Assembly (NCBI RefSeq): GCF_006345805.1
Contig: NC_043007.1
Coordinates: 43,896,001-43,960,000, forward strand
Origin: Octopus sinensis
Lineage: Eukaryota
DNA length: 64,000 nucleotides
Reading direction: 5' to 3'
Every line of letters starts with the position of its first letter. Position 1 is the stretch's first letter. Under the pieces are notes generated by a model. It saw only the letters and a list, made by a program, of their open reading frames with translations. It ran no database searches and had not been told where the DNA came from. This document shows positions 9,356-51,670 of the stretch, in pieces. A program made the position numbers and the translations under genes.

Positions 9356-9387
<32 letters not shown>

Positions 9388-10375
9388 CATGAAAAATAAA
9401 AACATTTACCATCTATCTCCTGGACCATGGTCTCTGACCTTTTTTTACCATATAAAATAATTTGCTAGGCGAAGTCTTCCTCAACTAGGCCATCAACAAC
9501 GCCTAGGCCACAGGTAGTAAAATTTCTAAAATCTTTATTAACCTGATATTATTAATCACGATATTTTTATGTACATATACATACTTACATACCTGCACAC
9601 ACATATATACATATATACACACACACCTATAGATATTTCCACACATATATGCACATGCGTACTTAAGATAGTACAAAAAGTGTGTATATTCATATCAGGT
9701 GGATGTGTCATCAAAAAGCAGGATTAGATCTCTCACTCTCAGGAGTCCCAGATGAATTTAGCTTCACAGCAAGAAGTGCAAGGGAAGGCAGCGGTGTCAG
9801 ATTCTCTCATGCATCGAATGTCTAGTTCTTAATACCTTTTTTTGCAAGTAAAAAATGTGTATGTTGTAAAATCAAATGGTAGTGCCCCAGCATGGTCACA
9901 GTTCGTGAGCTGAAACCAGTTCAATTCAATTCAATTCATATATACTTTTCCTTATTCAGGCAGTGGTTGGTTGGTGTCGTTCGTGGATTGTTGAGATGGT
10001 AGTTTTTGTTCAAAAAAAAACACGCACACACCCACACATGCACACATCTACCTACACTAGATACGCACACACATACACACACGCATATACACATGCGCAT
10101 ACACACGCGTGCACACACCCGCATGCACACACACAAGCATACATAAAATCTACACACCTGTAGAATTTATCTCGACGGTATGAGAGAGGACGCGAAAGTT
10201 AAGTCGACAGGTTCGAAACCAGAGACGAATGCTGTTGTATGATGGGAGAGGGGTGGAATTAAGAAAGGAGAAAGGAGTGGGAGTGTAGATGCATGTATAA
10301 TAGTATGTCTATGTCTGGAAGCAAGTATAAGAGGGAATGGTGTGTGCATGAGCATGTAGTGTATGTCTGTAGATG

Positions 10376-20558: not shown

Positions 20559-20898
20559 CTTTCTTTCTTTTATTAGCCACACAGGGCTGAATACAGAGGG
20601 GACAAATACAAATGCAGAGCTTTTCTTTTCGAGGGTGGAAAAAAAATAAAAAATGTAAGATTGCGATCAAAAGGGATCGAGAGGAGGAAAAAAAAAAAAA
20701 AAAAAAAAAAAGGAAAAAAGGAAAAAAAGGAAAAAAAGGAAAATCGTGTATCACAGAAATAATGGTGTAAACATTGATATAACAAGATTGGGTTCATCCG
20801 TGGGAAGAAAAGCCTACAGAAAAGACCACGGGAACCCCAGTCAGGGAGGAAATAAACACATGAGGTCAAAAATGCTCTCTTTCTTTCTTTTTTACGAT

Positions 20899-23800
20899 CT
20901 ACAGGATCATGCTCAAAATGGTTTCGTTACTAGCACGCACCATCTTTGCAACATTCACCCATCTTTTTTTGAATCTTTCGCGAGACAAAAATTTCCTCTC
21001 CATTCTCACCTTCCTTTTCAAGTGGTACTTGAAAAAGTTGATGAGCGATTGGCCAGAGAGGTAAGTGTTTGTCTCTAATCCTTTCGCTCGAGTCCACCAC
21101 ACACATTCTTTCACCATGGCCACCAGTACGATGAAAACTGCCTTGCCTTCCCGGTTGAGGGAAGGGGGCGGAGCAATTCTCACGATAGACTCGGCCGATA
21201 GGCGGATTCGTCCCACACGTGACAGCAGCCGTTCGGCATAAGCCCACAGGTCGGAAATGGTTGGACATTGCACGAGTGCGTGCAGAACGGTTTCGTCGCT
21301 CTGACCGCATCTCGGGCAAGTCGGTCCAGTGTGTCTGGAACCGTGTCTGTAGAGCTTATCCCGAACAGGTAATGCTTCTCGATAGCACTGCCAGGCCAGG
21401 GATCTTTGGTGATTGTTCATAGGTCCCGGCCCGAAAGTTGTCCTGAACAGGCGGGTCAGGTGTTCCTCGTCGACGCCCAGACTCTGCCCGAGTTCGTCGT
21501 CGCACCTCCCCTCCACTAATCCTCTATAGAATGCCTTTGTTGTGATGGAGTCGCACAAGTTCGATCCCGGACGGCAGAGTTGCTTGAGAGCAACGCGACA
21601 CTCGCGGTGCCATTTGCCTAGCCTCGGTCTCTGCTTGATCCATGACTGTAGTTCGTCCAAGGAGACGAGCTGCGGGAAAGCGCGCCGCACAAAAGGCGAC
21701 CACCCCTGTTCACCGTTGTCTATGAAGCGCCGGAGATGTCGCAGTCTCAGCGCATGTCTGCGCATCATCAACCACGGCATGCCCAGCCCTCCATTTAGCG
21801 GGTGTTGGCAGCAAATGGATCGCCTAACCATCGGAACGTTTCCCTTCCACAAGAAGCGGAAGAGTATGCGTTCCAGTTTGGTGATGGTAGGGTCGGGACA
21901 AGGCACGACGGTCAGACGATACTCGATGACGGATGCGATGTACGCGTTCGCCACCTCCGCCCGACCATTTAGGGATAGCTTTCTCTCAGTCCATTTCTGG
22001 GTGAGAGTAGCCACCCTAGTCGTTATCTCGCCCCAGTTCTTCTCCATTTGGAGGTCCGGACCGAACCAGACCCCGAGCAATTTAACCGGTCCGTCCGTCC
22101 AGCGTCCCACGATGGAGACGCTGTTGGACGGCATGGGCTTGCTTCTCCAGGTGCCGAGCCGCAAGCCCACTGACTTTTCCCGGTTAATTTTTGCTCCCGT
22201 TACCGCTTCGTATTCTTTCAGTGTCTCGCCGACCAGCTCGATGTGCTCGTAGCTCGACACTATGACGGTGACGTCATCCGCGTATGCAGACACGCTCCTC
22301 CCGCATCCCAGCTCTCGTGGGATGCCCCTCAGCGTCGCCAGTTTCCGCAGTAGTGGCTCAAGAGTCAGTACATACAGCAGCGATGAGAGGGGGCATCCCT
22401 GACGAACCGAACGCATGATGTTAAAAGGTCTGGATAGATGACCATTTACGCGAACTACTGAGCGGATGCCGCTGTATAAGGCAGCGATCCAACCGCGGAA
22501 AACTGGACCGAAACCAGCCGCTTTGAGGACAGCCTCCAAGTAGTGATGGTCTACCCTATCGAAGGCTTTTGATTGATCCAATTGATCAGCGCCCCACCCA
22601 TGCCAGGATTTTTAACTACCCTGTCTATGATGTAGCGCATCAGATGGAGGTTGTCATGAATACTTCTACCCGGCACGGCGCATGTTTGCGCCTTGTCGAT
22701 TAGTTTCTTGATGACAAGCGCCAACCTCTCGGCTAACACCTTGGCCAAAATTTTCAAATCTGCGTTGAGCAGAGTGATGGGCCTGAAATTATCTATGACG
22801 TCCCCCTTGTTTGGGTCTTTCTTGATCAGTGCCACTGCTCCTCGCTTTACAAAAGCAGGAATACTCCCGTTCTGCTGCCAGTTGCAGTAGACAGCTGCCA
22901 AGACGCCTCCAAACAAGTCTGGCATATGAAAATAAAATTCGTAGGGCAGACCATCCAAGCCTGGTGACTTGTCTCTCGCGCAGCCTACCATCGCATCCTG
23001 TACGTCCGCAGCTGTGATAGGCTTTTCACAAGACTCCACCTCCCTTGCTGAGAGTCGTGGCAAGGCATGCAGGTAGGCACTAAAGTCCACTCTGCTTTCT
23101 GACTCACCACTTGTCCCAAACAGTTGGGTGAAGTGTTGTTGAAAAACCCCACACATCCTTTTAGGCTCGAGCAATTCGCGCCCCTGTTCATCTATAAGAG
23201 ACTTGATGGTGGATCTGTTGCCTCGTTGCGTCTCCACCACTCGGGCCTCTTGGGCGGCTCCAACTCCTTCGTTCCTCAGAGCACGCATCCTAGCTCTGAC
23301 AACGCATCCCTCGTGTTTAGCGTTGAGGTGTTGGTCGAGGGCCAATCTCGCCGCCAGTACGTTGGACGCGATGCCAGTTCTAAGTGCCTCTTCTAAAACC
23401 TTAACTAATTCTCCCTCTATTCTATTTCGGTCTAATGCTAGGGCTCTACTGTATCTGACTGATTCTGCTTTAATCGTTTTTTTAGGGCATACCACCATCT
23501 GTTGTTGATGATGGTACCCGTCAAAGCTCTCTTAACTAATGTGCTGATCCGGTCCCTGTAAACCTGTCGTGCTGTAAAAGACGCGTTCAGTTTCCAGTAA
23601 CCAGGACCCTGCCTATGTGTCTTATCTAAGTCAAGTGTACAAGTCACAAACTTGTGATCTGTGTAACTGACTATATGAAATTGTGGACAACCTACACTAT
23701 TTTTATCTATTGTCCTACAGAATACTCTATCTAAGTATGATCTGGACGACCCGATGCGGTTACTCCATGTCCACATTGGCACATTCGGGTGGTCCAGTCG

Positions 23801-24333
23801 GTACCTGTCAGACAGTTGGAAACGTCTGAGCAGGTCTTTGAGGCATTTGCATCCCCTTCTATTGCTATCTCTGCCCACGTAGTCTAGATGCGTGTCCAGG
23901 GTGGCATTCCAATCCCCCACTAAAAGTAAAGGACGAGACGTTCCCATGAAAGACTCTAGACGTCGAAAGAAATCTGGTCGGCCTGTTAAGGACGGAGCAT
24001 AAACTGCTATCAGTCGAAAAGCACACTCATTGCTGCCATCGACATCCAAAACGACCAGCCTACCCTCGGGTCTAGGAAATTTGCTCTTACTTTGAGATCC
24101 AGACTCTTCCGGATAAGCACCGCGGTGCCACCTCCGCCCATTCTCGGTAGACACGGAGAAAAATAAATGTTGAAATGTGTACCGAAAATGTGCTGGAGTG
24201 CCCGCAAGCTGTGGAGTCTGGTCTCACTGATGGCTATGATATTCAGATTTAGTGACTTGATGTCATTTAACAGGTAGCCTTGTTTCCAAGGCGACCCCAA
24301 GCCACGTACATTTATACTACCTATTCTGAGCAT
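20899..24333 (-). CDS. LINE ORF2 (APE endonuclease + reverse transcriptase + CCHC), about 1145 aa if three 1-nt frameshifts are repaired
   Basis: INVRGL/ISET, YAP, GDWN, YLDRVF and TDHK (APE). KSPGLDGLP, FRPITLLN, DQSKAFDRV, VRQGCPLS and YADD (RT). CPRC..ETVLHALVQC (zinc finger). Four overlapping ORFs joined at ~24068, ~23480 and ~22580. Confidence 0.9.
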
Positions 24334-24375
24334 GTTCCGATAAAAGTGCAAAAAAGGAAAAGGAGAGAGAAAAGG

Positions 24376-25351
24376 TTACTTGTTTTTCGAAAGTTCTTTG
24401 TCTTTCACCTCACGGTCTTCTTCTATGAGGCTTTTATACAGTTTTTTCGATGAGTACTTTTGAAATCTCCCTACTGCATCAGCAGGTAAAGAGATTTCAG
24501 GGTGCTGTATGTGTTCTGTGTCACGTGTATTATTTTAATGTGTTGTGGTGGTTTGTGTGTGGGCGGTTACTTGTTTTTATGTCGTTTTCAGTAATGTTAG
24601 TGTTTGACCTAATGTGTTCCATTAGGTCGTGGTTGTTTGTGTTTATGGCTGTCAACATTTTTGGGGGGTTTGATGATGGTGTGTGTTGTGTGATGTGTGT
24701 GTTTTCTGTGGATGTTTTTGTTTCGGGAGTGGTGTATCTTCCCGCTTTGTTTGTTATTTTTTCTTTCTTTTTTTCCCCCTTTTTCTTCTCCCCCTGTGGC
24801 TATTTGCCAATCTTCCGTGTCTTCTTCGTCTAATGACAGATCAGACGAATCGGAGTCTGGAAGAGGGAAAGTATTGGGGGTCTATTGTCGACTGTGTTGG
24901 TGTTGGTTGGTGAGCGTTTGGTTGTGGTGTATGCGGTTTTGGATGTGGGGTTTGGGTATTTTGTGTTTGAGTGATTGTGGGTATTGTTGTGTTGTTTAGG
25001 GTCTCAATTTTGTGGGGATTTGGAGTTGTAATTGTTTCTTCATTTTTGCTGGGTGTCTTTTTGGCAGATGTCCTTGGTTTGGGAGTTGGTATATTCTTGG
25101 TTGTTGTTGGTGATGCTGCTTCTGTTCTTGGTGCTGCAGTTGGTGTGGTTGTTTGTTTGGTGAGGTTTGTCCCTGCAAAAAGTGGTGTGGGTAGTAAACC
25201 TTGTTTATTTGTTTTTGTTTCCGGCTGCTGTTGTTGTTGCTGTTGTTTTCTTGCGGCAGATTTGCAGTCTTTTTTGAGGTGTTGCTCACTGCCGCATATG
25301 TAGCAACGTGGTCTTCTGCCATCGACGACCACATATAACTTGTGGTCGTCT

Positions 25352-29771: not shown

Positions 29772-30136
29772 AGGCGCAGGAGTGGTTGTGTGGTAAGTAG
29801 CTTGCTTACCAACCACGTGGTTCTGGGTTCATTCCCACTGCGTGGCACCTTGTGCAAGTGTCTTCAGCTATAGCCTCGGGCCGACCAAAGCCTTGTGAGT
29901 GAATTTGGCAGGCGGAAACTGAAAGAAGCCCGTCGTATATATATATATTTGTTTATGGTGGTGTGTTTATGTCCCCGTAACTTAGCGGTTCGGCAAAAGA
30001 GACCGATAGAATAAGTACTAGGCTTACAAAGAATAAGTCCTGGGGTCGATTTGCTCGACTAAAGGCGGTGCTCCAGCATGGCCGCAGCCAAATGACTGAA
30101 ACAAGTAAAAGAGTAAAAAAGAGTAAAAGAGTAAAA
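29772..30136 (+). mobile_element. Intact tRNA-derived SINE family B (shows the empty target site AAGTAGCTTGCTTAC at 29795-29809)
   Basis: A-box-like TGGTTGTGTGGT, B-box GGTTCATTCCC, central (TA)n and AGAGTAAAA-repeat tail. Confidence 0.9.
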
Positions 30137-35469: not shown

Positions 35470-35960
35470 GAAGGGCTATTAAAGCAGAGGCGTTGGGGTT
35501 AGGGTTAGCAATAGAGAAGTCATGAGTAAAGTGAGATATAGTCAGGAAGCTAGAAGAGGCACTTAGAAAAGGTATAGCAATCGACGTTCTGGCGACGAAA
35601 TTGACTCTCGATCGATTCTTCAATGCCAAGCAAAGAGGTTGCATTGTCAGAGCTAAGACGCGTGCTCTAAAACAGTAGTGAAGGAGAGATGTTCGATGAG
35701 CCAGAATGGCAGAGCCGCAACGTGGCAACAATTCGGTCTTCGACGGGTGGGTACGGGCTCTTGCAAATGGAATCCGAAGAGATGTGTGCAGAATTTCAGC
35801 GACACTTCGCTAAACCGTGCGCGGCGCGCGGTGGGTCGGAGACAGTGGTGACTTTCACCTCCTACGTCGACGGCTTGTCGCAGCTTTTGGTCAGGAATGA
35901 TCAGCCAAAAACATACGTGACACGATAACTAACTACGCAAGGGAAAATCTCCGGGGTTGG
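35470..35960 (+). pseudogene. Degraded Tx1-like ORF2 internal fragment
   Basis: LTLDRFFNAKQRGCIVRAKTRAL and EMCAEFQRHFAK align with LALDQHLNAKHEGCVVRARMRAL and RMCGVFQQHFTQ of the LINE at 20.9-24.3 kb. Confidence 0.75.
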
Positions 35961-35983
35961 ATTGTTTACCCTTCAAGTTTTAT

Positions 35984-36190
35984 CTTCAGCTAGCAGAATC
36001 ATTAGCACGCCGGGGAAAATGCTTAGCAGCATTTTGTCCGTCTTTACATTTTAAGTTCAAATTCCACCTAGGTCGACTTTGCTTCCATCCTTTCGGGGTC
36101 GATAAAATAAGCACCAGCACAGTATTGGGGGTCAATGTAATCGACTATCCCACTCCCCCAAATTTCAGGTCTTGTGCCTATAGTAGAAAG
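35984..36190 (+). mobile_element. SINE family A
   Basis: AGCTAGCAGAATCATTAGCACGCCGGG head and CCTTTCGGGGTCGATAAAATAA body. Confidence 0.8.
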
Positions 36191-39220: not shown

Positions 39221-39650
39221 TACGTGCGTGCGTGCGTGCGTGCGTACATACATACATACATACATACATACATACATGTCAGGACTGACCTGGGCTCAAG
39301 TAAGAACAACTACTACATATATGTATGTACAGCATATGTGTTGATTTCGTGATTGTGGACGTGGGGCTAAACAAAAACAAAATATAGTTTATCTATAAAG
39401 GAAGAATTAAAAGCAAAACCAACATTCAACTACTACCTTTATTTTAACTGACGAAAGAATTAAACGACAGAGTTTGAACTCAGAACGCCAAGGCATGCAG
39501 CTACAAACCCCAAGGCTCTTTGCAGTCATTATACCACTTCTACTAATCTAATAGTAACAACATACAGGGTGTGACAGCTGAAACTCCCATATTTTGCACG
39601 GTCAATGGTGTTAATAAAGTTAGACAGTTCATTAAAAAGATTTTTTTTTT

Positions 39651-39870
39651 TTTTACTTGTTTCAGTCATTTGACTTATGGACACGCTGGAGTACTGCCTT
39701 TAGTCGAGCAAATCTACCTCACAGCTTATTCTTTGTAAGCCTAGTACTTAATTTATCGGTCTCTTTTGCCGAACCGCTAAGTTACGGGGACGTAAACACA
39801 CCAGCATCGGTTGTCAAGCGATGCTGGGGGGACAAACACAGACACACAAAAATAGACACACACACACACA

Positions 39871-39906
<36 letters not shown>

Positions 39907-40046
39907 GACTGGCTTCTTTCAGTTTCCGTCAACCAAATCCACTCACAAGGCTTTGGTCAGCCTTTGGCTATAGTAGAAGATACTTGCCCAAAGTGCCACG
40001 CAGTGGCATTGAGCTCGGAACCATGTGGTTCGTAAGCAAGCTACTT
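39651..40046 (-). mobile_element. SINE family B, 3' portion (split by the ORF1-element array)
   Basis: Matches 29772-30136 in reverse up to GTAAGCAAGCTACTT (40032-40046). The missing first ~22 nt are at 48526-48547. Confidence 0.9.
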
Positions 40047-42325
40047 TATTTCATAAATTTGTCATATAGACAGTACAAAGAGCTTTGCAGGCTGGACAAA
40101 CACGTTAATAAATGAAATGAATTATAATGAATAGATGAGAGACGAAACCCAACACCCGCCGATTGGATTTTTCTCGAAAACATATTTTCTTTTCTTTCTT
40201 TTTAAATCAGTATAAGGTTTCAAACCTTTTACAAGGAGGCACTAAAACCTCTTACTTAACATATTTTCTTTTTTCTTTCTTAAAACACAAAATTAAGGTT
40301 ATAAACCACTACAAAATAGTCCAATAAAGTGAGGTTTCAAACTCTGTAACGAGGGTCTTTCACCTCCTACTCTTCGATATATCCATCGATATATTCATCA
40401 TTATCTTCAGTGCCGCTTGAGTTCCTGTATCCCGCCGTTTCCCATGCCTCACTCATGTAGGACATGTAAGTCGTGTAAGGGCCACCCGGCCATATGCGAC
40501 ACTCCTCCCCAAATCCTTTAAGCCTTTCCCACAAGGGAAACCTTATGACCTCCACAGCTATCTGCGGAGGCCACTCGGGATCCCGTGTGAAGGGCATATC
40601 TACTGTTTCTTTATGTTCTTCTACTATTTTCCCCCTCCCCGCCCTTGTAGAAAAAGATAATCAATTGATCATCTTTAAGGGTGGGGTGGTTTCTTCCACC
40701 GTGGGTGGCATAACTTCGGGGCATGCAGTCGGTACATCATCTCCCTGCTGAAATGACCCGTTCTTCTTTCTTTTTTTCTTTTCTTCCTGACTTCGGTAGA
40801 GTGGAGCTCTTCCGCTTTGTCCAGAGACTCTTTCCCGCCTCCCGAAGCCTTAGGTTCCTTCGGCGGGCAACTATAGTTGCCCGCCTTCCTTTTTAATCCT
40901 TTTAGAGTTGAGGAGGCTGAAGCCTCCTCGACCACATCCACCTCTCCCTTTGACCGGGTAGGGGAGGTGGCATCTGGTGACTGTTCCAGGACCTTACCAT
41001 GGTCTTGGGGGTAGTTCCTTCTAATGTGGCCTGGCTGCAGGCATGAGTGACACTTTGGGGGACGTCCCTCAAGTATCACCGGATACCTGCAGCCAGCCAT
41101 TTTCAAGAAATCTGGAAAAACCAGTTCTGCTGCGGCCGATGGGGTCCACACACAGGTCAAAATCGCTTTTGACCATTCCCAATCGACCGCCGGCAATACC
41201 CTTACATTTAAGAGCCTGGGCCCACCATCCCCCAGTCCCAGTCGGATGGTATCTTCAATCCAATCCGCTTCGGTGCCCAGGGGGAGCCCACATACCCAGG
41301 CTCGTATTAATTTTCTTCCACAATATGATGGGAGAAACAAAATTTCCTTGCCTTCTAAAGGCTGACTGGCGAGCCTTTTCCCCGTTGTCAAGCAGCAACC
41401 ATACGGTTGCATGTTTGACACCACGGGATATATATTTTACGGAGGACAAATGTTCTTTGAGTTCATTTTTTATGACTTGTTTCGGGAAGACGGTGATGGA
41501 ATTAAGAATTTTAGAATACGTTCTAAGTACGATCGTCTTCTCCTCCATATCTTTTAACCATTGCTTAAGCGGGTTAATTTCCCACTCTAAGACAGAGTTT
41601 TTCTTTTTAAGTTCCTTCTCTGCCATGTCAAAAAAGTTCAAAAGTAGTTCAAAAGACAATCTGCCAAAAAATTAAACCGAATAAAAATAAAACAAAATAA
41701 AGGGGAGGGGAGGAAACTGAAATTAAAGTAATGAAAAGAATGAACCAAAAATTTTTAGAAAGCAAGAAATAATAGAAGGGAAAAGTAAAAGAAAAATCTC
41801 ACAAATAGCACAGACAGGGAATCCTTTGTATAATACTCCAAAAAGGTAATCCAAAAAGGTAATCCAAATGGCTTATTCTTTTTTTTTTTTTTTGTTTTGG
41901 CGAGATACGCCCACTAGAATTCACAAGAAGAATTTTCAAAAAAATTCGCAATTCACCGTTACGGCCAAAATTTAACAAAACTGTAAAACAGTTTAAAAAA
42001 TCATTCCAAATTTCTTCTAGGTACTCCTTAACAGGAACAACACTATTTTCAAACAAAAGTTTGGCAGGATACGCCTACCAAACCAATAATTTTCACAATC
42101 AGGCGAATAATATTTTCACTCAGCCTCCGGCATACTAGAGCCTACTAAGGACTTGTTGCTTGTAAAAATAATCTGTTACATACAACAGGTCCCCACTAGA
42201 CCCCCAAAATTCTTACCTTACGGCTGAGTATTCAAAAGTCTTCAATTTAAGACGGCTTTGAAAAACTCGTCTTACATCTTCGGTGTCACGCTCAACACTG
42301 ACTTGCACATGCGTAGAAGCAACCT
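40047..42325 (-). mobile_element. ORF1-only (half-LINE) element, unit 1 (divergent subfamily)
   Basis: Bounded by target copies 40032-40046 and 42326-42340. Single frameshifted gag-like ORF, no EN/RT. Confidence 0.82.
40367..41626 (-). pseudogene. LINE ORF1/gag-like protein (RRM-like region + zinc knuckle), unit 1, two frameshifts
   Basis: MAEKELKKK..., LFLPSYCGRK..WVCGLP, YPVILEGRPPKCHSCLQPGHIRRNY (last Cys to Tyr). ORFs 41255..41659, 40675..41424 and 40367..40597. Confidence 0.8.
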
Positions 42326-42340
42326 GTAAACAAGCTACTT

Positions 42341-44274
42341 TATTTTATATAATTTGCCACTAGGGCAGCACACAGAGTAGTAGCTACGGGCTGGACAAGG
42401 ACATTAATGGATGATGGTGGTGGTGGATGAAGATGGTGATGGGAGAAGTCGAAAGCGCCCGCCGACTTTCGCTTCTCTAAAACAATGTTTCAATTCACAA
42501 TGATTCAAATTACATAAAAAATGTTCAACAATTCTCCTCGTCAGGTCCCCGAAGCAAATTGTCTTGCCGCCTGCAGACAACTCTGCGACGACAAGTCGGG
42601 GCCTGCAAAGAGAAAAGTAAAATCTTTCCTTTCAAAGGTCTCTGCGACCCTTGACAAAGTATCTTCCGTTACTTTTTCCGCAGCTACCCACGGAGGCCAT
42701 AACGGACTCCTTGAGCCGACCGTGCCCTTACGTTCTCGGTCACCCAAGCCATTCAAAAATCTTTCCACCTCCTCTCCCTTGTGGTAAAGGAGGAGAAGCA
42801 TCTCCTCTTCACAGGAAGGGACCTCACACTGCTCCGTCAGTGGCACACTTCCTACTGGCGGAGCCTTGTTCGCAGGTGGCACACATCCCACCCGCGGCTC
42901 CGTCGGCGACACAGAAACGTCAGTCGTCCGACCTCTCCTTTTTCTCCTCCTTCTTTTGGGGGAGACTGCTGACCCAGGGGACTCCGTCACCAGACACGGG
43001 GGATTGCTATCCCCCTCCGCCCCTGTTGCTCGCCTGTCTCTTTCTTTTCGTGGAGGCAACCTCCTCCACGACTTCCACCGTCTCCCCCTCCAATGAGGGG
43101 GCGGCGGGCGCCTTTTCCCCTTCTGCTCCGGGGCACCACCACGGCCCTCGGGACAATTCTTCCTGATATGTCCGGGCTTCAGGCACAGGTGACACTTGGG
43201 GAGGCGACCCTCGAGTATCACCGGGTACCTGTGCCCAGCCATTCTCAGGAAGTCCGGGAATTTCATTTCTCCCACGGCCACCGGTGTCCACAGGGTCAAA
43301 GTTGCCTTTTACCCCTCCCAGGCGACCGCGGGAGCCATTTTCACACTCAGTAGTCTGGGTCCGCTATCCCCCAGGCCTCGCCGGATGGTCTTCTCGATCC
43401 ATTCCGCCTCCGTGCCCGGGGGCAGCCCACACACCCAGGCTCTTTTTACTTTTCTGCCACAATACGAAGGGAGGAACAAAATTTCCTCTCCCTCCAGTGG
43501 CTCGCTAGCAAATCTGCTAGCTTCCTCGGGGGTACCAAACAGCAACCACACCGTTGCAAATTTAGTCCCCGAGAAATAAATTTTATAGTTGGCAGGTGGT
43601 CCCCCAACTCTTTCTCTATAGTATTCCTGTCGAAGAGGGCAATGGCTCCACGCGACCTAGAATAGGTTCGTAGGACCACCGTCCTCTTCTCAAGACTTTC
43701 AATCCACCGCTTGGGTGGGACGACCTCCCATTCCAAAGCGGTGGTTTCTTTTGTTGCCATGTTTTTTTTTTAAATAAATGTATCAGAATAAAACTAAAAA
43801 ACGAGAAGAAAAGGAAATCCGAAGAAAGTCACAATGAAAAAAGGAGAGAGTCAAATAAAGTTAAAAAGAAAGTCAAATAAAGTTAAAAAGAAAGTCAATA
43901 ACACAGCAAAATCCTTTTGGCCACTTGGTACTCCCGGCCTAAATCGAACCAGGATCGCACAACTTCCACAAAAATTGGTGTAAAATTGGTAGTTCTTCAC
44001 AGCACAATACAATTCTCACAATTCGAAGACGGATACGCCCCAAAAAATTTTCTCAGCGAGAAAAATATATTTGCCACATGTCGGCAGAATCAGAATTCTG
44101 AATCCAGTAGGACTTCCTGCATGTAAAAAACAATTCTCAACAAAAACTCCCACTGGACCCAGAAAACAGAATCTTACCTTACATGGGGCTTCCAAAGTTT
44201 TCAATTCAAGACGGCTTCAAAAGCACATCTTCACTGCTTCAGTGCCAAACACAACACTGACTCGCACATGCGCA
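42341..44274 (-). mobile_element. ORF1-only element, unit 2 (subfamily A)
   Basis: Bounded by target copies 42326-42340 and 44275-44288. Confidence 0.85.
42541..43760 (-). pseudogene. ORF1/gag-like protein, unit 2 (1-nt indels, in-frame TAA at 43309-43311, 26-nt deletion)
   Basis: MATKETT..., KCHLCLKPGHIRKNC CCHC knuckle, basic PKRRRRKRRGR, C-terminus ...FLFAGPDLSSQSCLQAARQFASGT. Confidence 0.85.
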
Positions 44275-44288
44275 GTAAGAAGCTACTT

Positions 44289-46370
44289 TATTTTATTTCA
44301 TTTAATTTGCCACTAGGGCATCACACAGAGGTAGCAGTAGCTCCGGGCTGGACACAGACATTAATGGATTATGTAATGATGGATGAAAATGGTGATGGGA
44401 AAAGTCAGAAGCGCCCGTCGACCTCTGCTTCTCTAATACAATGTTCTTTTTACAATGTTTTTAATCTTACAAAATTCAAAATTCAAAAATTTCAGAAAAT
44501 AACAGTGTTCAATGAATACATTTAGTAAAATGTTCAAAAATGTTCAAAATGTTCAAATTACATTTTTTCAGACGAGGTGATAAACCTCCTCTTCAACATG
44601 TTTAAAATGTTCAAAATGTTCAAAAAGTGTTTAACAATTCTCCCCGTCAGGTCCCCGAAGCAAATTGTCTTGCCGCCTGCAGACAACTCTGCGACGACAA
44701 GTCGGGGCCTGCGAAGAGAAAGGTAAAGTGCCTTCTTTCAAAGGTCTCTGCGACCCTTGATAAGATAGCCTCCGTTACCCTTTCCGCAGCTACCCACGGA
44801 GGCCATAACGGATTTCTTGAGCCGACCGCGCCCTTGCGCTCTCGGTCGCTCAAGCCATTCAAGAAATCTTCCACCTCCTCTCCCTTGTGGTAGAGGAGGA
44901 GAAGCATCTCCTCTTCACAGGAAGGGACCTCCAGTGGCTCACTTCCTACTGGCGGAGCCTTGTCGCGGGTGGCACACATCCCACCCGCGGCTCCGTCGGC
45001 GACACAGAAACGTCAGTCGTCCGACCTCTCCTTTTTCTCCTCCTTCTTTTGGGGGAGACTGCTGACCCAGGGGACTCCGTCACCAGACACGGGGGATTGC
45101 TATCCCCCTCCGCCCCTGTTGCTCGCCTGTCTCTTTCTTTTCGTGGAGGCAACCTCCTCCACGACTTCCACCGTCTCCCCCTCCAATGAGGGGGCGGCGG
45201 GCGCCTTTTCCCCTTTCTGCTCCGGGGCACCACCACGGCCCTCGGGACAATTCTTCCTGATATGTCCGGGCTTCAGGCACAGGTGACACTTGGGGAGGCG
45301 ACCCTCGAGTATCACCGGGTACCTGTGCCCAGCCATTCTCAGGAAGTCCGGGAATTTCATTTCTCCCACGGCCACCGGTGTCCACAGGGTCAAAGTTGCC
45401 TTTTACCCCTCCCAGGCGACCGCGGGAGCCATTTTCACACTCAGTAGTCTGGGTCCGCTATCCCCCAGGCCTCGCCGGATGGTCTTCTCGATCCATTCCG
45501 CCTCCGTGCCCGGGGGCAGCCCACACACCCAGGCTCTTTTTACTTTTCTGCCACAATACGAAGGGAGGAACAAAATTTCCTCTCCCTCCAGTGGCTCGCT
45601 AGCAAATCTGCTAGCTTCCTCGGGGGTACCAAACAGCAACCACACCGTTGCAAATTTAGTCCCCCGAGAAATAAATTTTATAGTTGGCAGGTGGTCCCCC
45701 AACTCTTTCTCTATAGTATTCCTGTCGAAGAGGGCAATGGCTCCACGCGACCTAGAATAGGTTCGTAGGACCACCGTCCTCTTCTCAAGACTTTCAATCC
45801 ACCGCTTGGGTGGGACGACCTCCCATTCCAAAGTGGTGGTTTCTTTTGTTGCCATGTTTTTTTTTTAAATAAATGTATTCAGAATAAAACTAAAAAACGA
45901 GAAGAAAAGGAAATCCGAAGAAAGTCACAATGAAAAAAGGAGAGAGTCAAATAAAGTTAAAAAGAAAGTCAAATAAAGTTAAAAAGAAAGTCAATAACAC
46001 AGCAAAATCCTTTTGGCCACTTGGTACTCCCGGCCTAAATCGAACCAGGATCGCACAACTTCCACAAAAATTGGTGTAAAATTGGTAGTTCTTCACAGCA
46101 CAATACAATTCTCACAATTCGAAGACGGATACGCCCCAAAAAATTTTCTCAGCGAGAAAAATATATTTGCCACATGTCGGCAGAATCAGAATTCTGAATC
46201 CAGTAGGACTTCCTGCATGTAAAAAACAATTCTCAACAAAAACTCCCACTGGACCCAGAAAACAGAATCTTACCTTACATGGGGCTTCCAAAGTTTTCAA
46301 TTCAAGACGGCTTCAAAAGCACATCTTCACTGCTTCAGTGCCAAACACAACACTGACTCGCACATGCGCA
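44289..46370 (-). mobile_element. ORF1-only element, unit 3 (A/B recombinant)
   Basis: Bounded by target copies 44275-44288 and 46371-46384. The 5' half matches unit 2 and the 3' half matches unit 4. Confidence 0.85.
44647..45855 (-). pseudogene. ORF1/gag-like protein, unit 3
   Basis: Same TAA (45403-45405) and 26-nt deletion as unit 2. C-terminus EVEDFLNGLSD..RRHFTFLF as in unit 4. Confidence 0.85.
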
Positions 46371-46384
46371 GTAAGAAGCTACTT

Positions 46385-48511
46385 TATTTCATTTAATTTG
46401 CCACTAGGGCATCACACAGAGGTAGCAGTAGCTCCGGGCTGGACACAGACATTAATGGATTATGGTAATGATGGATGAAAATGGTGATGGGAAAAGTCAG
46501 AAGCGCCCGTCGACCTCTGCTTCTCTAATACAATGTTCTTTTTACAATGTTTTTAAATTTTACAAAATTCAAAATTCAAAAATTTCAGAAAATAACAGTG
46601 TTCAATGAATACATTTAGTAAAATGTTCAAAAATGTTCAAAATGTTCAAATTACATTTTTTCAGACGAGGTGATAAACCTCCTCTTCAACATGTTTAAAA
46701 ATGTTCAAAATGTTCAAAAAGTGTTTAACAATTCTCCCCGTCAGGTCCCCGAAGAAAATTGTCTTGCCGCCTGCAGACAACTCTGCGACGACAAGTCGGG
46801 GCCTGCGAAGAGAAAGGTAAAGTGCCTTCTTTCAAAGGTCTCTGCGACCCTTGATAAGATAGCCTCCGTTACCCTTTCCGCAGCTACCCACGGAGGCCAT
46901 AACGGATTTCTTGAGCCGACCGCGCCCTTGCGCTCTCGGTCGCTCAAGCCATTCAAGAAATCTTCCACCTCCTCTCCCTTGTGGTAGAGGAGGAGAAGCA
47001 TCTCCTCTTCACAGGAAGGGACCTCCAGTGGCTCACTTCCTACTGGCGGAGTCTTGTCCGCGGGTGGCACACATCCCACCCGCGGCTCCGTCGGCGACAC
47101 AGAAACGTCAGACGTCCGACCTCTCCTTTTTCTCCTCCTTCTTTTGGGGGAGACTGCTAACCCAGGGGACTCCGTCACCAGACACGGGGGATTGCTATCC
47201 CCCTCCGCCCCCTGAGCGTTCTTTGGTGGGCAACCATTGTTGCTCGCCAGCCTCTTTCTTTTCGTGGAGGCAACCTCCTCCACGACTTCCACCGTCTCCC
47301 CCTCCTATGAGGGGACGGCGGGCACCTTTTCCTTTTCATGTTCCGGGGCGGCACCACGGCCCCCGGGACACTTCTTCTTAATATGTCCAGGCTCCGAGCA
47401 CCGGTGACACTTGGGGGCGCGTCCCTCAAGCATCACCGGGTACCTGGACCCGGCCATCTTCAGGAAGTCCGGAAAAACCAGACTCTTGGCCGACTGGGTC
47501 CACAGAGTCAAAGTGGCCTTTGACCCTTCCCAGTTAGCCGCAGGCTGCATTTTAACGTTGAGGATCTTGGCGTCCCTGTCACCCAGCCCCCGGCGGATAG
47601 AGTCTTCTATCCACTCGGGTTCAAAGCCGGGCGGCAGGCCACAGACCCACAAACGTAACAATTTTTCCCCCCTGTAACTGGGAAGAAACAGAATTTCATT
47701 GTCCTCAATGGGCTGGCTTGCACATTTGCAAGCTTCTTCGGCGGAGTCAAATAGCAACCAGACCGTTGCGTACTTGACCTCCCGTTGTATATGTTTAACG
47801 GCTGGCATATAATCTGCCAGCTCGTTCTCAATGGTATCTCTCGGAAAGACCATTATGGTGTCGAGTACCTTTGAAAATGTTCTCAGCACCACGGTTCTTT
47901 CCTCAAGATCATGTAAATATTTTTTGGGAGGTGCCAACTCCCACACAGTAAAATTCCTTGCCTTCGCCATAACGTAAAATACAATAGTTCAATAATAACT
48001 AAATTTAGCCACAGAAAGGAGAATAAAAATGTAACAGAAGGGAAGAAAAAATAAAAATGGCAGTTCAAAAAAGTTTTTAACAAATAAATGATAGAAGAGA
48101 AAGAGAGTTCAAATTAGGCAAAGGAATTCAGTTTTCTTTTTTTTTCTCACTTCTTCGGCCAGAATGTAATCCGTGCCAAATGCATTGGTAAGACCCTTGG
48201 TAAACAATCCTTGGTAATCCCGTGGACACACAATGACGATTTCACAATAATCTCTTCAGTCGGACCAAGCCGCTTCAAAAATACAATTTCTTTCGCTCGA
48301 CACAGGCAGAAAAATTACATTCGGAGAAAAGTGGAGCCTTATTACTTGCTAAAAATATTAAATGTTAAAAAACATTCATGCAAGCAATAAAGCTTCACTA
48401 AACCCACAAAAACACAAAATTCCTACCTTTAGTCGAGACGAAAGTTCAATTTTCGCGTTGAAACAACACGACATCTGGAGCAGCAAAAAAACACGTCTAA
48501 CTCAGACGAAG
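46385..48511 (-). mobile_element. ORF1-only element, unit 4 (subfamily B)
   Basis: Bounded by target copies 46371-46384 and 48512-48525. Confidence 0.85.
46741..47970 (-). pseudogene. ORF1/gag-like protein, unit 4: 409 codons, single in-frame TAG (47305-47307)
   Basis: ORFs 47305..47970 and 46741..47292 are in the same frame. Knuckle KCHRCSEPGHIKKKC. The TAG aligns with TTG (Leu) in units 2/3. Confidence 0.88.
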
Positions 48512-48547
48512 GTAAGAAGCTACTTACCACACAGCCATTCCTACGCC
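48512..48547 (-). mobile_element. 5' head of the split SINE family B copy
   Basis: GTAAGAAGCTACTT-ACCACACAGCCATTCCTACGCC is the reverse complement of the SINE start (compare 29773-29809). Confidence 0.85.
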
Positions 48548-48589
48548 TCTCTCTATAGTTAGTAACGATGTCTTTATATCTTTATCTTT

Positions 48590-48841
48590 TATATTTTACT
48601 TGCTTCAGTCATTGGACTGTGGCCATGCTGGAGCATCACCATGAAGAATTTTTAGTCGAATGTATCGACCCCAGTACTTATTTGTTTTAAAGCCTGGTAC
48701 TTATTCAATCGGTCTCTTTTGCCGAACCGCTAAGTTATGGGGACGTAAACACATCAGCACCGGTTGTCAAGCTGTGGTGGAAGGAAAAACACCGACTCAG
48801 TGACACACACACGTAGTATGTATGTACGTATATATGTATGT

Positions 48842-48936
<95 letters not shown>

Positions 48937-49101
48937 CGATGGGCCTCTTTCATTTTCGTCTACGAATTTCACCCACAAGGCATTGATCAGTTCAAGGCTG
49001 TAGAAGACGCTAGCCCAAGGTGCCATGCAGTAGTACTGAACCCAGAACCCTGTGGTTGGGAAGCAAGCTTCTTCCTACATACACAGCCAATTCCTGCGCC
49101 T
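48590..49101 (-). mobile_element. SINE family B with internal (TAGA)n
   Basis: Tail TTACTTGCTTCAGTCATTGGAC at left and head ..CACAGCCAATTCCTGCGCCT at right. Confidence 0.85.
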
Positions 49102-49191: not shown

Positions 49192-50090
49192 CCAAACTAA
49201 AAATAGAACAGCAACGAACCATGATAAAACGATGGCAAGAAAAGCCCCTTCATGGTAAATACTGCACTAAACTAAACGCAAAAGAAATAGACAAAGAAAG
49301 ATCCCAGCAATGGTTGAGAAGCTCAGGACTCAAAGCAGAAACAGAGGGATTTTTAATTGCAGCACAAGACCAAAGCCTCCCCACCAGAAATTACCAAAAA
49401 CATGTAATGAAAAGAAATATTACAAGTAACTGCAGAATATGTGGAGATGGACAAGAAACAATAAATCATATTATCTCTAGCTGCCCAGTCCTGGCTAAGA
49501 AGGAATATATTCACAGACATGACAGAGTTGGAACCTACATACACTGGAAGCTATGCCAACATTATGGAATAACAACAGAAAAAAGATGGTATAGGCACAC
49601 ACCAGAAAAGGTTACAGAAAACGAGAAAGCAACCATACTCTGGGATATGCCGATACACACAGATAGAGAAATTAAGGCCAATAGACCAGATATAGTTGTC
49701 AGAGATCATGACGAAAAAAATGCTTTCTAATTGATGTATCAATACCGGCAGATGACAACGTGTCTCTAAAAGAAATGGAGAAACTCTCAAAATACAAAGA
49801 CCTGGAAATAGAGGTAACTAGAATGGGAATCTGAAAACAGAAACAATCCTATCATAGTAGGTGCATTAGGCATAATAAAAAATATTCAGACAAATACATA
49901 ACAAAACACCAGGACTTACAAACACATATATCATACAGAAAATTGCACTACTGGGCACTGCACACATCCTACGCAGAGCACTTTCCATACAATAACCATC
50001 AGAGCATCACAACAAATCACAGCACATACCCAAGGCACACAGAGCTGCGCTCGGTAGTGAAGTGAAAGCACGCTATAAAAATAAAAACTA

Positions 50091-50439: not shown

Positions 50440-51670
50440 GATTTGAGGCACTAGCCTTCATGCCCATCTTCGGTGGGTATGAGGTGTTCTCATCTCTAAG
50501 TCATACTGGTTCGAGATGTGGAATCGCTATATTGTTTCGAAAAGGTCTAGATCTTGCGATTCGGAATATCTTCTTGGATTTGGTAGATAAGTTGATAGTG
50601 TTGTACGTAACTAGCAGTGAACGCCATCCCTTCCGATCAATAGCCGTCAATAGACATGAAACAACTAGATTTCTTTTGGTGTCTAGTATCTTTCCTGGAA
50701 ACGTCTCGCTCTTTGGTGCGGGTGGGGGATTGGAACGACATCTTGGAAGCATGCTGGGACTACATGGAATCAGCTGATAACAAAGAAGTAATTCAAAAGC
50801 CTCTCTAGCCTACTCAGATGATTCCAACGATTGCAGTGAGAGTGACCCTTGACCAATTGTTCAACGCGAAGTACAAAACTGCGTTGTTAGAGCTAAAGCA
50901 TGTGCTACAAGACCCAAATGAACAACTGCCGTTCGATGGACCCGAGTAGCAAAGGCACAACAGGACAATAAATCCACAGCTGAGTCTTTGACTGGCCATG
51001 GTGAGAGCGCGCTACACGATCCCAGGTTGTTGTCTGCGGCTTTTTAGCGGCACTTTGCTCGACTGTTCGGGAAGAGTGCCGGATTGTATTGCAGGATATA
51101 TTTCAAAATTTACCTCGATATCTATCTACGACTCAGCAATGGATGTAAAGTGTTGGGAAAATCTGATAACACCACAATTTCTAGTTACACAAAAGGCTAA
51201 ATGCCTGGTTTTGATCCTCTACCCTACTAGCCTTAGGTTTATATTCCACACTTGTTCAGTAACATCTTGGCAAATATCTACTACAAATGACAGCAGCAGG
51301 CAGCAGAACAAGATAATACTCAGTTGTGTGAACCGAGGAGCGGAGACGCTGTGAAGAATGGATCCGAGCATGAACTACCGTATTGCTAATTGTCAAATTT
51401 CAAGTTTTGGGCCAAGGCCTTAGCGAAGATTTTGGCAATTGCCGTTAGTTGTCTGATTGGTGATGTGCAGACATACGCCATCCCAAACATATCTATCCAC
51501 AGCAACCCCCACTTCATGCGATACCTCACAGAAAGGATGAGTAAGGAACCTAGCACGTATGGACTCCTGATAAATTTAGATCAGCCGAAAGCTTTCGATT
51601 ACAAATACTTAATGGCTGTCCTTGCAGTGTCGGTCCCGTCTTCGGAGTCTGGATTACTACAAGGTATCTC
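50440..51670 (+). pseudogene. Old, internally deleted Tx1-like ORF2
   Basis: GIAILFRKGLDL..FLD..KLIVL..FRSIAV (APE) and KALAKILA..SIHSNPHFMRY..LINLDQPKAFD (RT) align with the LINE at 20.9-24.3 kb. Confidence 0.75.

What the first reader, a model, noticed from the sequence alone, without database searches (positions are those of the whole stretch)
40032..48547. Tandem stack of ORF1-only 'half-LINE' elements inserted site-specifically into a SINE head
Seen: a SINE-B copy is split. Its body ends at 40046 and its first ~22 nt resume at 48526. Between them lie four ~1.9-2.3-kb co-oriented units. Each is separated by a copy of the same SINE-derived 14-15-mer: 40032 GTAAGCAAGCTACTT, 42326 GTAAACAAGCTACTT, and 44275, 46371 and 48512 GTAAGAAGCTACTT. 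The empty site is visible in the intact SINE at 29795-29809, just 3' of the A-box inside a GGTAAG/CTTACC hairpin. Each unit has a 5' UTR, one ~400-codon gag-like ORF with a CCHC knuckle, and a short 3' UTR, with no endonuclease or RT. Units 1, 2 and 4 are clearly divergent, so at least three independent insertions hit the same site. Known: Tx1-clade LINEs are often sequence-specific and form tandem arrays because the TSD regenerates the target, and HAL1 elements are ORF1-only L1 derivatives. Inference: an ORF1-only, SINE-targeting Tx1 derivative, i.e. a non-autonomous element parasitizing another non-autonomous element. I do not recall this combination being described, but cannot check.
Basis: partly seen in the sequence, partly recalled or inferred. 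Interest (0 to 1): 0.9.

Follow-up and report, generated by a model that had tools for sequence, protein, structure and literature searches.

The report
ORF1-only LINE array splitting an octopus SINE
An octopus SINE is split at one exact spot in its tRNA-like head by a head-to-tail stack of about 2-kb retrotransposons that encode only an RNA-binding (ORF1-type) protein and no reverse transcriptase. They look like site-specific parasites that borrow another LINE's enzyme, a new combination of features that are each already known.

Summary
On the minus strand, a tRNA-derived octopus SINE is split between head (48547-48526) and body (40031-~39640) by four co-oriented 1.9-2.3-kb units. One copy of the SINE 14/15-mer AAGTAGCTT(G)CTTAC sits at every junction.

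Each unit has a 5'UTR, one ~400-codon ORF and a 3'UTR. The ORF encodes two RRM folds, one CCHC knuckle and a C-terminal region. There is no endonuclease or RT. All four ORFs are disabled.

- Correction: only three units (U1, U2, U4) are independent. U3 is an exact U2-5'/U4-3' mosaic made by unequal crossover.
- Site specificity: two other Octopus sinensis loci carry further subfamilies joined to a SINE head within 0-3 nt of the same position.
- Selection: dN/dS between subfamilies is 0.07-0.27 with saturated dS, so this is an old ORF1-only lineage kept under selection.
- Relatives: distant ORF1 homologues belong to full-length APE/RT LINEs that form tandem arrays or sit in microsatellites in octopus. 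These share the units' 3'-terminal motif.

Clade assignment to Tx1 rests on behaviour and ORF1 type, not RT phylogeny. No SINE-head-specific ORF2 donor was found. Precedents exist for each trait (HeT-A, HAL1, Tx1-Mar/SINEU-3), so I rate this a new variant of a known kind, of moderate interest.

The parts
48526..48547 (-). 5' head fragment of the split tRNA-derived SINE (GGCGTAGGAATGGCTGTGTGGT, carries the A-box-like TGGCTGTGTGG)
48512..48525 (-). J0: target copy AAGTAGCTTCTTAC between the SINE head and U4. It is identical to J1, which fits a target-site duplication made by the U4 insertion.
46385..48511 (-). U4, the 5'-most and least decayed unit: 5'UTR 47971-48511, ORF 46741-47970, 3'UTR 46385-46740
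46741..47970 (-). U4 ORF of 409 codons, broken only by an in-frame stop at 47305-47307. It encodes two RRM folds, a CCHC knuckle, a basic linker and a C-terminal region with a WPPW motif.
46371..46384 (-). J1: target copy AAGTAGCTTCTTAC between U4 and U3
44289..46370 (-). U3, a recombinant unit. From 46370 to 45017 it matches U2 at 555 informative sites; from about 44939 to 44289 it matches U4. ORF 44647-45855 has stops and frameshifts.
44940..45016 (-). Crossover interval of the unequal exchange between U2 and U4 that created U3
44275..44288 (-). J2: target copy AAGTAGCTTCTTAC between U3 and U2, a duplicate of J1 made by the crossover
42341..44274 (-). U2: 5'UTR 43761-44274, ORF 42541-43760 (one frameshift, one stop, an out-of-frame linker stretch), 3'UTR 42341-42540
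42326..42340 (-). J3: target copy AAGTAGCTTGTTTAC between U2 and U1. It is followed by 10 extra target-like bases (AGGTTGCTTC) before the canonical U1 5' end.
40047..42325 (-). U1, the 3'-most and most diverged and decayed unit: ORF about 40367-41626 with frameshifts and stops. It is 67-72% identical to U2 and U4, and only in the ORF core and the termini.
40032..40046 (-). J4: target copy AAGTAGCTTGCTTAC (canonical SINE sequence), continuous with the SINE body
39640..40031 (-). Body and tail of the split SINE: B-box region, (TA)n/(TG)n middle, 3' part
46395..46421 (-). Conserved 3'-terminal motif CTCTGTGTGATGCCCTAGTGGCAAATT of U4. The same motif is in U3 at 44304-44330, in U2 at 42351-42377, and in diverged form in U1 at about 40060-40090. 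It contains a 4-bp hairpin shared with autonomous octopus LINEs.
29772..30120 (+). Uninterrupted copy of the same SINE showing the empty site at 29795-29809

Best explanation
The region is a head-to-tail array of a non-autonomous, ORF1-only derivative of an L1/Tx1-type LINE. The element inserts by target-primed reverse transcription at one specific position in the tRNA-like head of an abundant octopus SINE.

Shown:
- Three diverged subfamilies (U1, U2, U4) occupy the same site, with a 14-15-bp copy of the SINE sequence AAGTAGCTTGCTTAC at every junction.
- U3 arose later by unequal crossover between U2 and U4.
- Two further subfamily copies elsewhere in an octopus genome join a SINE head at the same place.
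- The only ORF encodes two RRM folds plus a CCHC knuckle (type I LINE ORF1p). It evolved under purifying selection while the subfamilies diverged.
- There is no endonuclease or RT.
- The 3' end carries a short hairpin motif shared with full-length APE/RT LINEs of the same genome.

Inferred:
- An ORF2 protein supplied in trans by a related, so far unidentified, autonomous LINE nicks the bottom strand between GGT and AAG.
- It primes on the element's 3' end, which it recognises through the shared 3' motif.
- The top strand is cut about 15 nt downstream, at CTTAC|C and up to 3 nt further, which gives the duplication.
- The target is the palindrome GGTAAG...CTTACC, so both nicks fall in a CTTACC hexamer, one on each strand.
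- Each new copy appears to have entered the 5'-most target copy, the only one that keeps the upstream SINE context. This would explain why the youngest-looking unit (U4, identical flanking copies, one stop) is 5'-most and the most decayed (U1) is 3'-most.
- Insertion separates the SINE's A and B boxes and so should silence that SINE copy.
For: - Junction oligomers and rebuilt SINE. Empty site in the intact SINE.
- U3 mosaic: 555 informative sites match U2, then a switch to U4.
- Units differ strongly. U1 against U2 or U4 is 67-72% identical, in the ORF core only. The flanking SINE is 85-88% identical to another copy. The units therefore diverged before they arrived here.
- Independent loci: L001 9452-9489 and L006 15704-15741 show SINE head, then target copy, then element 5' end.
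- In 242 kb of octopus DNA, 3 of 12 SINE heads are interrupted at this site, all by this family. Two of the loci were chosen through the element, so the sample is biased.
- ORF: CCHC. AF2 model with pLDDT 88.7 has two RRM folds matching HuD, Sxl, UP1 and Npl3. dN/dS is 0.07-0.27.
- No ORF2 similarity in the array.
- Distant ORF1 homologues (E about 1e-20) lie in full-length ORF1+APE+RT+zf-RVT LINEs. These form 5.3-kb tandem arrays in O. vulgaris, O. sinensis and O. bimaculoides or sit in (TATC)n.
- Shared 3' motif with a hairpin that shows compensatory changes. Homologous 5' and 3' ends among subfamilies.
- Literature: Tx1-clade elements and their non-autonomous partners target other transposons, with 16-bp duplications and tandem copies (PMC4494074). 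RRM+CCHC ORF1p in non-mammalian animals is consistent with Tx1 (PMC5203782). L1-Tx1 families were recently active in O. vulgaris (PMC13282606).
Against: - Only three loci are known, and complete 3' junctions exist only in the window. The L001 and L006 copies lose homology before their 3' ends and have no SINE body downstream.
- No ORF2-bearing element was seen at this target, so the trans-mobilisation partner is hypothetical.
- Tx1 clade membership cannot be tested on an element without RT, and the related autonomous LINEs were not placed by phylogeny.
- All copies seen are disabled, so current activity is unknown.
- The nick positions and the 5'-most-copy rule are read from one array.
- Near-identical units in an assembly can be assembly artefacts.
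Confidence: 0.72

Rival explanations
1. The units are recurrent internal-deletion copies of a full-length, SINE-head-specific Tx1-like LINE. On this view there is no long-lived ORF1-only lineage: ORF2 was lost separately in each copy or subfamily, and the real family is autonomous.
For: Repeated independent ORF2 loss is documented in target-specialised Jockey elements (bioRxiv 10.1101/2025.06.09.658640). Full-length relatives with intact ORF1 and ORF2 exist in octopus. Sampling here covers only three loci.
Against: U1, U2, U4 and the L006 copy all end the ORF at the homologous place. In the window units it is followed by a short 3'UTR with a homologous ~150-nt tail, although synonymous sites between subfamilies are saturated (dS above 1). 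Independent deletions would not share end points. No ORF2 remnant is present in any unit.
Confidence: 0.13
2. The array is a product of local duplication only: one old insertion was amplified in place and the copies then diverged.
For: U3 did arise locally, by unequal crossover.
Against: U1, U2 and U4 are alignable only in the ORF core and the termini, at 67-72% identity. The SINE they interrupt is 85-88% identical to another copy, so the units are older than the host SINE. Related copies with the same junction occur at two other chromosomal loci.
Confidence: 0.03
3. The SINE head is carried by the element rather than targeted by it. On this view head-plus-unit chimeras (5' transduction or read-through from one ancestral insertion) spread as composites, and the shared junction reflects descent rather than specificity.
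For: Both extra loci (L001, L006) show a SINE head 5' of the element but no SINE body 3' of it.
Against: Inside the array the units are separated only by the 14-15-mer, without the 22-nt head. The window shows a complete SINE body directly after the last unit. The 5' junctions differ by 0-3 nt and the head sequences differ between loci. Three diverged subfamilies at one SINE cannot come from one composite.
Confidence: 0.06
4. The specificity comes from the RNA rather than from a dedicated endonuclease. Read-through transcripts end in the downstream target copy. That 3' homology anneals to nicked or extruded DNA at the palindromic SINE hairpin, so any related ORF2p could prime there.
For: Every 3' junction is exact, and the 3' end (..AAATAA|AGTAGC) overlaps the target by 1-2 ambiguous bases. 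The target is an 8-bp-stem palindrome. No partner with this target was found, and the autonomous relatives seen have other targets.
Against: There is no direct evidence. A regular 14-15-bp duplication and the near-constant 5' junction fit two enzyme-made nicks better than random breaks.
Confidence: 0.1

Closest known systems
Tx1-clade target-specific LINEs and their non-autonomous partners (Tx1L in Tx1D; Tx1-Mar and SINEU-3 in Mariner-N4_AMi; Kojima 2015, PMC4494074)
   Same: Insertion at one sequence inside another, non-autonomous, transposon. A 15-16-bp target-site duplication. Tandem copies sandwiching one duplication. A non-autonomous element sharing the target. An RRM+CCHC ORF1 type.
   Different: The target here is a tRNA-derived SINE head, not a DNA transposon. 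The non-autonomous element is 2 kb and keeps a selected ORF1, whereas SINEU-3 is a small non-coding SINE. RT-based clade membership is untestable here, and the autonomous partner is unknown.
HeT-A and other ORF1-only telomeric Jockey-clade retrotransposons of Drosophila (bioRxiv 10.1101/2025.06.09.658640)
   Same: Gag/ORF1-only elements that depend on ORF2 from other elements. Head-to-tail arrays at a specialised target. ORF1-only lineages that persist and give rise to new ORF1-only lineages.
   Different: HeT-A belongs to a different LINE clade (Jockey) and has a different ORF1 architecture. Its target is the chromosome end rather than an internal sequence, it makes no target-site duplication, and it has a host-beneficial role. 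None of that is shown here.
HAL1 (half-L1) of mammals (Bao and Jurka 2010, cited in PMC4494074)
   Same: A LINE derivative that retains ORF1 and lacks ORF2, presumed to be mobilised in trans.
   Different: HAL1 has the type II (Transposase_22) ORF1p, and from my own knowledge it shows no strict site specificity and no tandem stacks. Here the ORF1p is type I (two RRMs plus CCHC) and the element is site-specific.
Dewa (Tx1 clade, zebrafish; targets the spacer of tRNA-Leu arrays; PMC3706591)
   Same: A Tx1-type element tied to tRNA-related multicopy sequence.
   Different: Dewa is autonomous and sits in the spacer of genuine tRNA gene arrays. It is not found inside a tRNA-derived SINE head.

Membership tests
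LINE ORF1p, type I (Khazina and Weichenrieder classification, as summarised in PMC5203782) | At least one RRM fold | tested here: met
   The AF2 model of U4 residues 1-221 (pLDDT 88.7) has two beta-alpha-beta-beta-alpha-beta modules. Foldseek matches tandem-RRM proteins HuD, Sxl, UP1, Npl3 and IMP3.
LINE ORF1p, type I (Khazina and Weichenrieder classification, as summarised in PMC5203782) | CCHC zinc knuckle after the RRM(s) | tested here: met
   Pfam zf-CCHC hits in U4, U2 and U1 with E from 6e-4 to 8e-3, just under the gathering score. The motif CxxCxxxGHxxxxC is visible in all units.
LINE ORF1p, type I (Khazina and Weichenrieder classification, as summarised in PMC5203782) | Homology to the ORF1 of elements that also carry an APE/RT ORF2 | tested here: met
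   A profile search gave octopus proteins at E about 1e-20. Their loci L002, L003, L005 and L007 carry ORF1 followed by Exo_endo_phos, RT and zf-RVT.
Tx1 clade of non-LTR retrotransposons | Placement of the RT domain inside the Tx1 clade by phylogeny | not testable with these tools
   The element has no RT. The related autonomous octopus LINEs were not placed, because no reference Tx1 or L1 set was available. The source names for their homologues were uninformative.
Tx1 clade of non-LTR retrotransposons | APE-type endonuclease encoded by the element | tested here: not met
   No APE similarity anywhere in 40032-48547. At most the element is a non-autonomous derivative.
Tx1 clade of non-LTR retrotransposons | Sequence-specific insertion with a target-site duplication and tandem stacking | tested here: met
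   Five independent 5' junctions within 0-3 nt and three exact 3' junctions, with a 14-15-bp duplication at every junction.
ORF1-only non-autonomous LINE derivative ('half-LINE', in the sense of HAL1 or HeT-A) | A single ORF homologous to LINE ORF1 and no ORF2, in complete (not truncated) copies | tested here: met
   U1, U2 and U4 have homologous 5' ends, one ORF and homologous 3' tails, and are flanked by target copies.
ORF1-only non-autonomous LINE derivative ('half-LINE', in the sense of HAL1 or HeT-A) | The ORF is kept by selection across the lineage | tested here: met
   dN/dS is 0.07-0.27 over about 215 codons between four subfamilies, with dS 1.0-3.4.
ORF1-only non-autonomous LINE derivative ('half-LINE', in the sense of HAL1 or HeT-A) | A 3' end shared with an autonomous partner that supplies ORF2p | tested here: inconclusive
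   A 3'-terminal motif and a 4-bp hairpin are shared with several autonomous octopus LINE families. None of those has the same target, and none is close enough to name as the partner.
ORF1-only non-autonomous LINE derivative ('half-LINE', in the sense of HAL1 or HeT-A) | Many dispersed copies | tested here: inconclusive
   Three loci were found (window, L001, L006). Octopus genomes could not be scanned by DNA with these tools.
HAL1 proper | L1-clade type II ORF1p (Transposase_22) | tested here: not met
   No Transposase_22 hit. The architecture is two RRMs plus CCHC.
tRNA-derived SINE (the host element) | A tRNA-like head with A and B boxes, and dispersed copies | tested here: met
   TGGCTGTGTGG and GGTTCAGTCCC are read in the head. 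Twelve heads occur in 242 kb. ARAGORN and Rfam call no tRNA, so the tRNA origin is by resemblance only.

The most novel reading that the evidence does not exclude
Cephalopods may harbour an old, selected lineage of ORF1-only retrotransposons that lives exclusively in the anticodon-like hairpin of the genome's most abundant SINE. It would stack head to tail, inactivate each SINE copy it enters, and depend on an ORF2 donor. This would be a HeT-A-like lifestyle evolved independently in the L1/Tx1 group at an internal, hundred-thousand-copy target. A second ORF1-only family (L004/L008) hints that ORF2 loss is recurrent among target-specific LINEs in general.
Probability: 0.4. Interest if true: 0.7.

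Novelty: new variant of a known kind. Interest (0 to 1): 0.5.

Why it matters
SINEs make up about 12% of octopus genomes, so a retrotransposon that uses the SINE head as a safe landing site has a very large harmless target pool.

An ORF1-only lineage kept under selection in such a niche would be a second, independent case of the pattern seen at Drosophila telomeres, after HeT-A. It would suggest that target-specialised LINEs readily shed ORF2 and become dependent on relatives, which bears on how cooperation and cheating evolve among mobile elements.

Each insertion also separates the A and B boxes of the host SINE, so the element is a parasite that disables another parasite.

Practically, these units are annotated as host genes in octopus assemblies (LOC115225585, and part of a 'K02A2.6-like' model). 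They should be masked.

Tried and rejected
- Word-indexed protein search with the U4 N-terminal half found only one relative, O. sinensis LOC115225585.
- A search with the C-terminal region found nothing, and Pfam gives it no domain.
- A look-up of the exact U4 ORF product found no record, so the source assembly was not identified.
- A PDB sequence search found only CCHC knuckles.
- ARAGORN and Rfam found nothing in the window.
- The bacterial-type promoter and terminator scan and TRF were uninformative for this eukaryotic element.
- Searches for the conserved 3' tail in L001 and L006 found no 3' junction.
- Literature searches for SINE-targeting LINEs and for ZCCHC3/Tx1 links returned nothing relevant.
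- Considered and rejected: purely local duplication, a host RRM-CCHC gene family, and chance recurrence of the 14-mer.

Full report
**What the window is.** The sequence is AT-rich eukaryotic DNA full of repeats. The best protein match of the region is an Octopus sinensis prediction. All related loci come from O. sinensis, O. vulgaris and O. bimaculoides assemblies. The window is therefore octopus nuclear DNA.

**Checking the observation.**
- Everything reads on the minus strand.
- In element orientation the order is: SINE head (48547-48526), J0, U4, J1, U3, J2, U2, J3, U1, J4, SINE body (40031 to about 39640).
- Joining the two SINE pieces in a script gives one SINE of about 440 nt. It aligns at 85-88% to the uninterrupted copy at 29772-30120, where AAGTAGCTTGCTTAC lies at 29795-29809.
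- The site lies in an 8-bp-stem hairpin, TGGTAAGT-AGCTT-GCTTACCA, directly after the A-box-like TGGCTGTGTGG.
- The exact 14-mer occurs three times. The search found four matches at up to two mismatches against 0.5 expected.

**Anatomy of the units.**
- Each unit has a 5'UTR of about 515-700 nt, one ORF of about 400 codons, and a 3'UTR of 200-360 nt.
- U4 is nearly intact: 409 codons with a single in-frame stop at 47305-47307. U1, U2 and U3 have stops and frameshifts.
- Pfam sees only the CCHC knuckle.
- An AlphaFold model of the first 221 residues is confident (mean pLDDT 88.7). It consists of two RRM folds followed by the knuckle. Foldseek returns tandem-RRM proteins such as HuD, Sex-lethal, hnRNP A1 UP1 and Npl3.
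- This is the type I LINE ORF1p architecture, which in non-mammalian animals is described as consistent with the Tx1 clade (PMC5203782).
- The C-terminal 100 residues, with a conserved R-x-P-x-WPP-x-[IV]-A-x-E stretch, have no detectable relatives.
- tblastn with an intact octopus ORF2 (1132 aa) and with APE, RT and C-terminal pieces finds nothing in 40032-48547, although it finds other LINE remnants elsewhere in the window.
- The first 200 nt of the 5'UTR and the last 150 nt of the 3'UTR are homologous among the subfamilies. These are therefore complete elements with defined ends, not truncated LINEs.

**How many insertions.**
- U1 against U2 or U4 is alignable only in the ORF core and the termini, at 67-72% identity. 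The first half of U2 and U4 is 46-66% identical.
- The host SINE is much less diverged from its relatives, so these three units diverged elsewhere and arrived separately.
- U3 is different. At 555 sites where U2 and U4 differ, it follows U2 from its 5' end to window position 45017. From about 44939 to its 3' end it follows U4, with only a handful of private changes.
- That is the expected product of one unequal crossover between U2 on one chromatid and U4 on the other. It also explains why J1 and J2 are identical.
- The ancestral array was therefore U4-U2-U1.
- J0 and J1, which flank U4, are the same variant (AAGTAGCTTCTTAC, lacking one G). J3 (..GTTTAC) and J4 (the canonical ..GCTTAC) each differ.
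- This fits serial insertion into the 5'-most target copy: U1 first, then U2, then U4. Each new insertion would duplicate the copy as it then was.
- The degree of ORF decay (U4 least, U1 most) agrees. This ordering is an inference from one array.

**Is the site specific?**
- L001 (O. sinensis CM016886.1) holds a further subfamily, 65% amino-acid identity to U4. Its 5'UTR starts directly after GGCTGAGGCATGGCTGTGTGGT-AAGTAGCTTGCTTCC, that is, a SINE head plus the target.
- L006 (CM016865.1) was found through a chimeric gene model that borrowed the element's first 45 codons. It shows GGCGCAGGCGTTGCCGTGTGGT-AAGAAGTTTGCTTCCAC followed by TGCGCATGTGCGAG, the same 5' end as U2.
- In total, five independent 5' junctions lie within 0-3 nt of each other in a 440-nt SINE, and three 3' junctions are identical to the base.
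- In 242 kb of sampled octopus DNA, 12 SINE heads contain this region. Three are interrupted there, all by this family. Two of those loci were reached through the element, so this is not a frequency estimate.
- Weakness: both extra copies lose homology before their 3' ends, L001 at about 10975 and L006 at a (TG)n tract near 17770. Neither has a SINE body downstream.
- I considered that the head might travel with the element. The array junctions lack the 22-nt head, and the window shows the full SINE body after U1, which argues for targeting.

**Is the ORF1-only state a lineage or an accident?**
- Between U1, U2/U3, U4 and the L001 copy, about 215 codons of the RRM-CCHC region give dN/dS of 0.07-0.27, with dS from 1.0 to above 3.
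- The subfamilies therefore separated long ago while the protein stayed under purifying selection.
- All of them end the ORF at the homologous place, and the window units follow it with a homologous 3' tail.
- This favours an old ORF1-only lineage over repeated fresh deletions.

**Relatives with ORF2.**
- An exhaustive profile search gave, after L001's protein, a set of octopus proteins at E about 1e-20.
- L002 carries an ORF1 of 615 aa followed by Exo_endo_phos, RT and zf-RVT pieces.
- L003 (O. vulgaris), L005 (O. sinensis) and L007 (O. bimaculoides) carry head-to-tail arrays of full-length elements, with a 5.28-kb period in L003 and L005. The L003 array includes an intact ORF1 (503 aa) and ORF2 (1132 aa). 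A recurring junction sequence (GAATACTCGTCAT in L005) differs from the one studied here.
- The window itself holds a 5'-truncated member at about 25350-20560 (minus strand), embedded in (TATC)n on both sides. L006 has another 3' end followed by (TATC)n.
- The ORF1 of the units thus belongs to an octopus LINE group that has APE and RT, forms tandem arrays and uses specific targets. This is the behaviour described for the Tx1 clade (PMC4494074).
- L1-Tx1 is listed among recently active O. vulgaris LINEs, with a mean insertion length near 5.4 kb (PMC13282606).
- I could not run an RT phylogeny with reference clades, and source names of ORF2 homologues were uninformative. 'Tx1-like' therefore remains an inference.
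- All these families and the units share a 3'-terminal motif..CTCTGTGT..GCCCT.GTGG..AAT.A...
- The motif contains a 4-bp hairpin in which three pairs show compensatory changes. It is a plausible recognition element for a related ORF2p.

**Mechanism (inferred).**
- A partner ORF2p nicks the bottom strand opposite GGT|AAG.
- The element RNA is positioned through its 3' motif and is reverse transcribed from that nick. Positioning may be helped by read-through into the downstream target copy.
- The top strand is cut 14-18 nt downstream, which gives the duplication and the small variation seen at 5' junctions.
- Because the target is a palindrome, both cuts fall in a CTTACC hexamer (CTT|ACC on the bottom strand, CTTAC|C on the top). 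This is a simple way for one endonuclease to make both nicks.
- No element with ORF2 was seen at this target in the DNA available. The partner is therefore the main missing piece.
- An RNA-homology-guided alternative is listed among the rival explanations.

**Comparison with known systems.**
- Tx1-clade LINEs that target other transposons are published. So is a non-autonomous partner (SINEU-3) that shares the target and stacks in tandem around a 16-bp duplication (PMC4494074).
- ORF1-only, ORF2-dependent, head-to-tail, target-specialised LINEs are also published: HeT-A and about 40% of telomeric Jockey families in Drosophila, where ORF1-only lineages give rise to new ORF1-only lineages.
- HAL1 is the L1 example of an ORF1-only derivative.
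- Two features appear new as far as the held literature shows. One is the target, a tRNA-derived SINE head. The other is the union of the two traits in an L1/Tx1-type element of a mollusc.
- Repbase and Dfam could not be consulted.

**Verdict.**
- It is unproven on Tx1 membership and on the partner, and too strong on novelty.
- I rate the finding a new variant of a known kind, with interest 0.5.

Noticed in passing
window 20560-25350 (minus strand): A 5'-truncated autonomous LINE: the tail of an ORF1 with CCHC, then APE, RT and zf-RVT. Its ORF2 is about 70% identical in amino acids to the L002 element. It is embedded in a (TATC)n microsatellite on both sides. A second 3' end of the same kind, followed by (TATC)n, is at L006 32232. 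This suggests a microsatellite-specific LINE family.
   Followed up: partly
L003 4623-19300; L005 2666-20850; L007 10055-20287: Head-to-tail arrays of full-length LINEs in O. vulgaris, O. sinensis and O. bimaculoides, with a 5.28-kb period in L003 and L005. L003 4623-6134 (ORF1, 503 aa) and 6058-9456 (ORF2, 1132 aa) are intact. The L005 junctions share GAATACTCGTCAT, a different specific target.
   Followed up: partly
L004 9900-11660; L008 10001-11710: A second, unrelated-looking ORF1-only family in O. vulgaris. L004 has an intact 389-aa RRM+CCHC ORF, the conserved LINE 3' motif at 11615, no APE or RT within 10 kb, and a possible duplication TGCTGGGTTCG(G)CTA at both ends. L008 holds a diverged copy that also lacks ORF2 and is flanked by an ~80-bp direct repeat.
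   Followed up: partly
window 48398-48408, 44172-44182, 42205-42215; L001 9583-9593; L006 15836-15846: A splice-donor-like motif, (T)GTAAG|GTAAGA or AAAG|GTAGGA, is conserved about 110 nt into the 5'UTR of all five subfamilies. A pyrimidine tract precedes the ATG. The 5'UTR may contain an intron.
   Followed up: no
window 42316-42325 (minus strand): Between J3 and the canonical 5' end of U1 lie 10 extra bases, AGGTTGCTTC, that resemble part of the target. They may be a 5' extension copied from an upstream target copy in the donor.
   Followed up: no
window 48587-49101 (minus strand): A second, uninterrupted copy of the same SINE family lies about 40 nt upstream of the split SINE's head, so the two SINEs are in tandem.
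   Followed up: no
window 49221-49730, 50457-51626 and 35472-35992 (plus strand): Other LINE remnants: a zf-RVT-containing ORF of 169 aa, and RT fragments about 33-45% identical to the L003 ORF2. They are unrelated to the array and lie on the opposite strand.
   Followed up: no
L001 10001-10846; L006 10001-36638: Two NCBI gene models are built from copies of this retrotransposon: LOC115225585, and the 'K02A2.6-like' XP_029639579.1. The second fuses the element's first 45 codons to an integrase-like fragment.
   Followed up: yes
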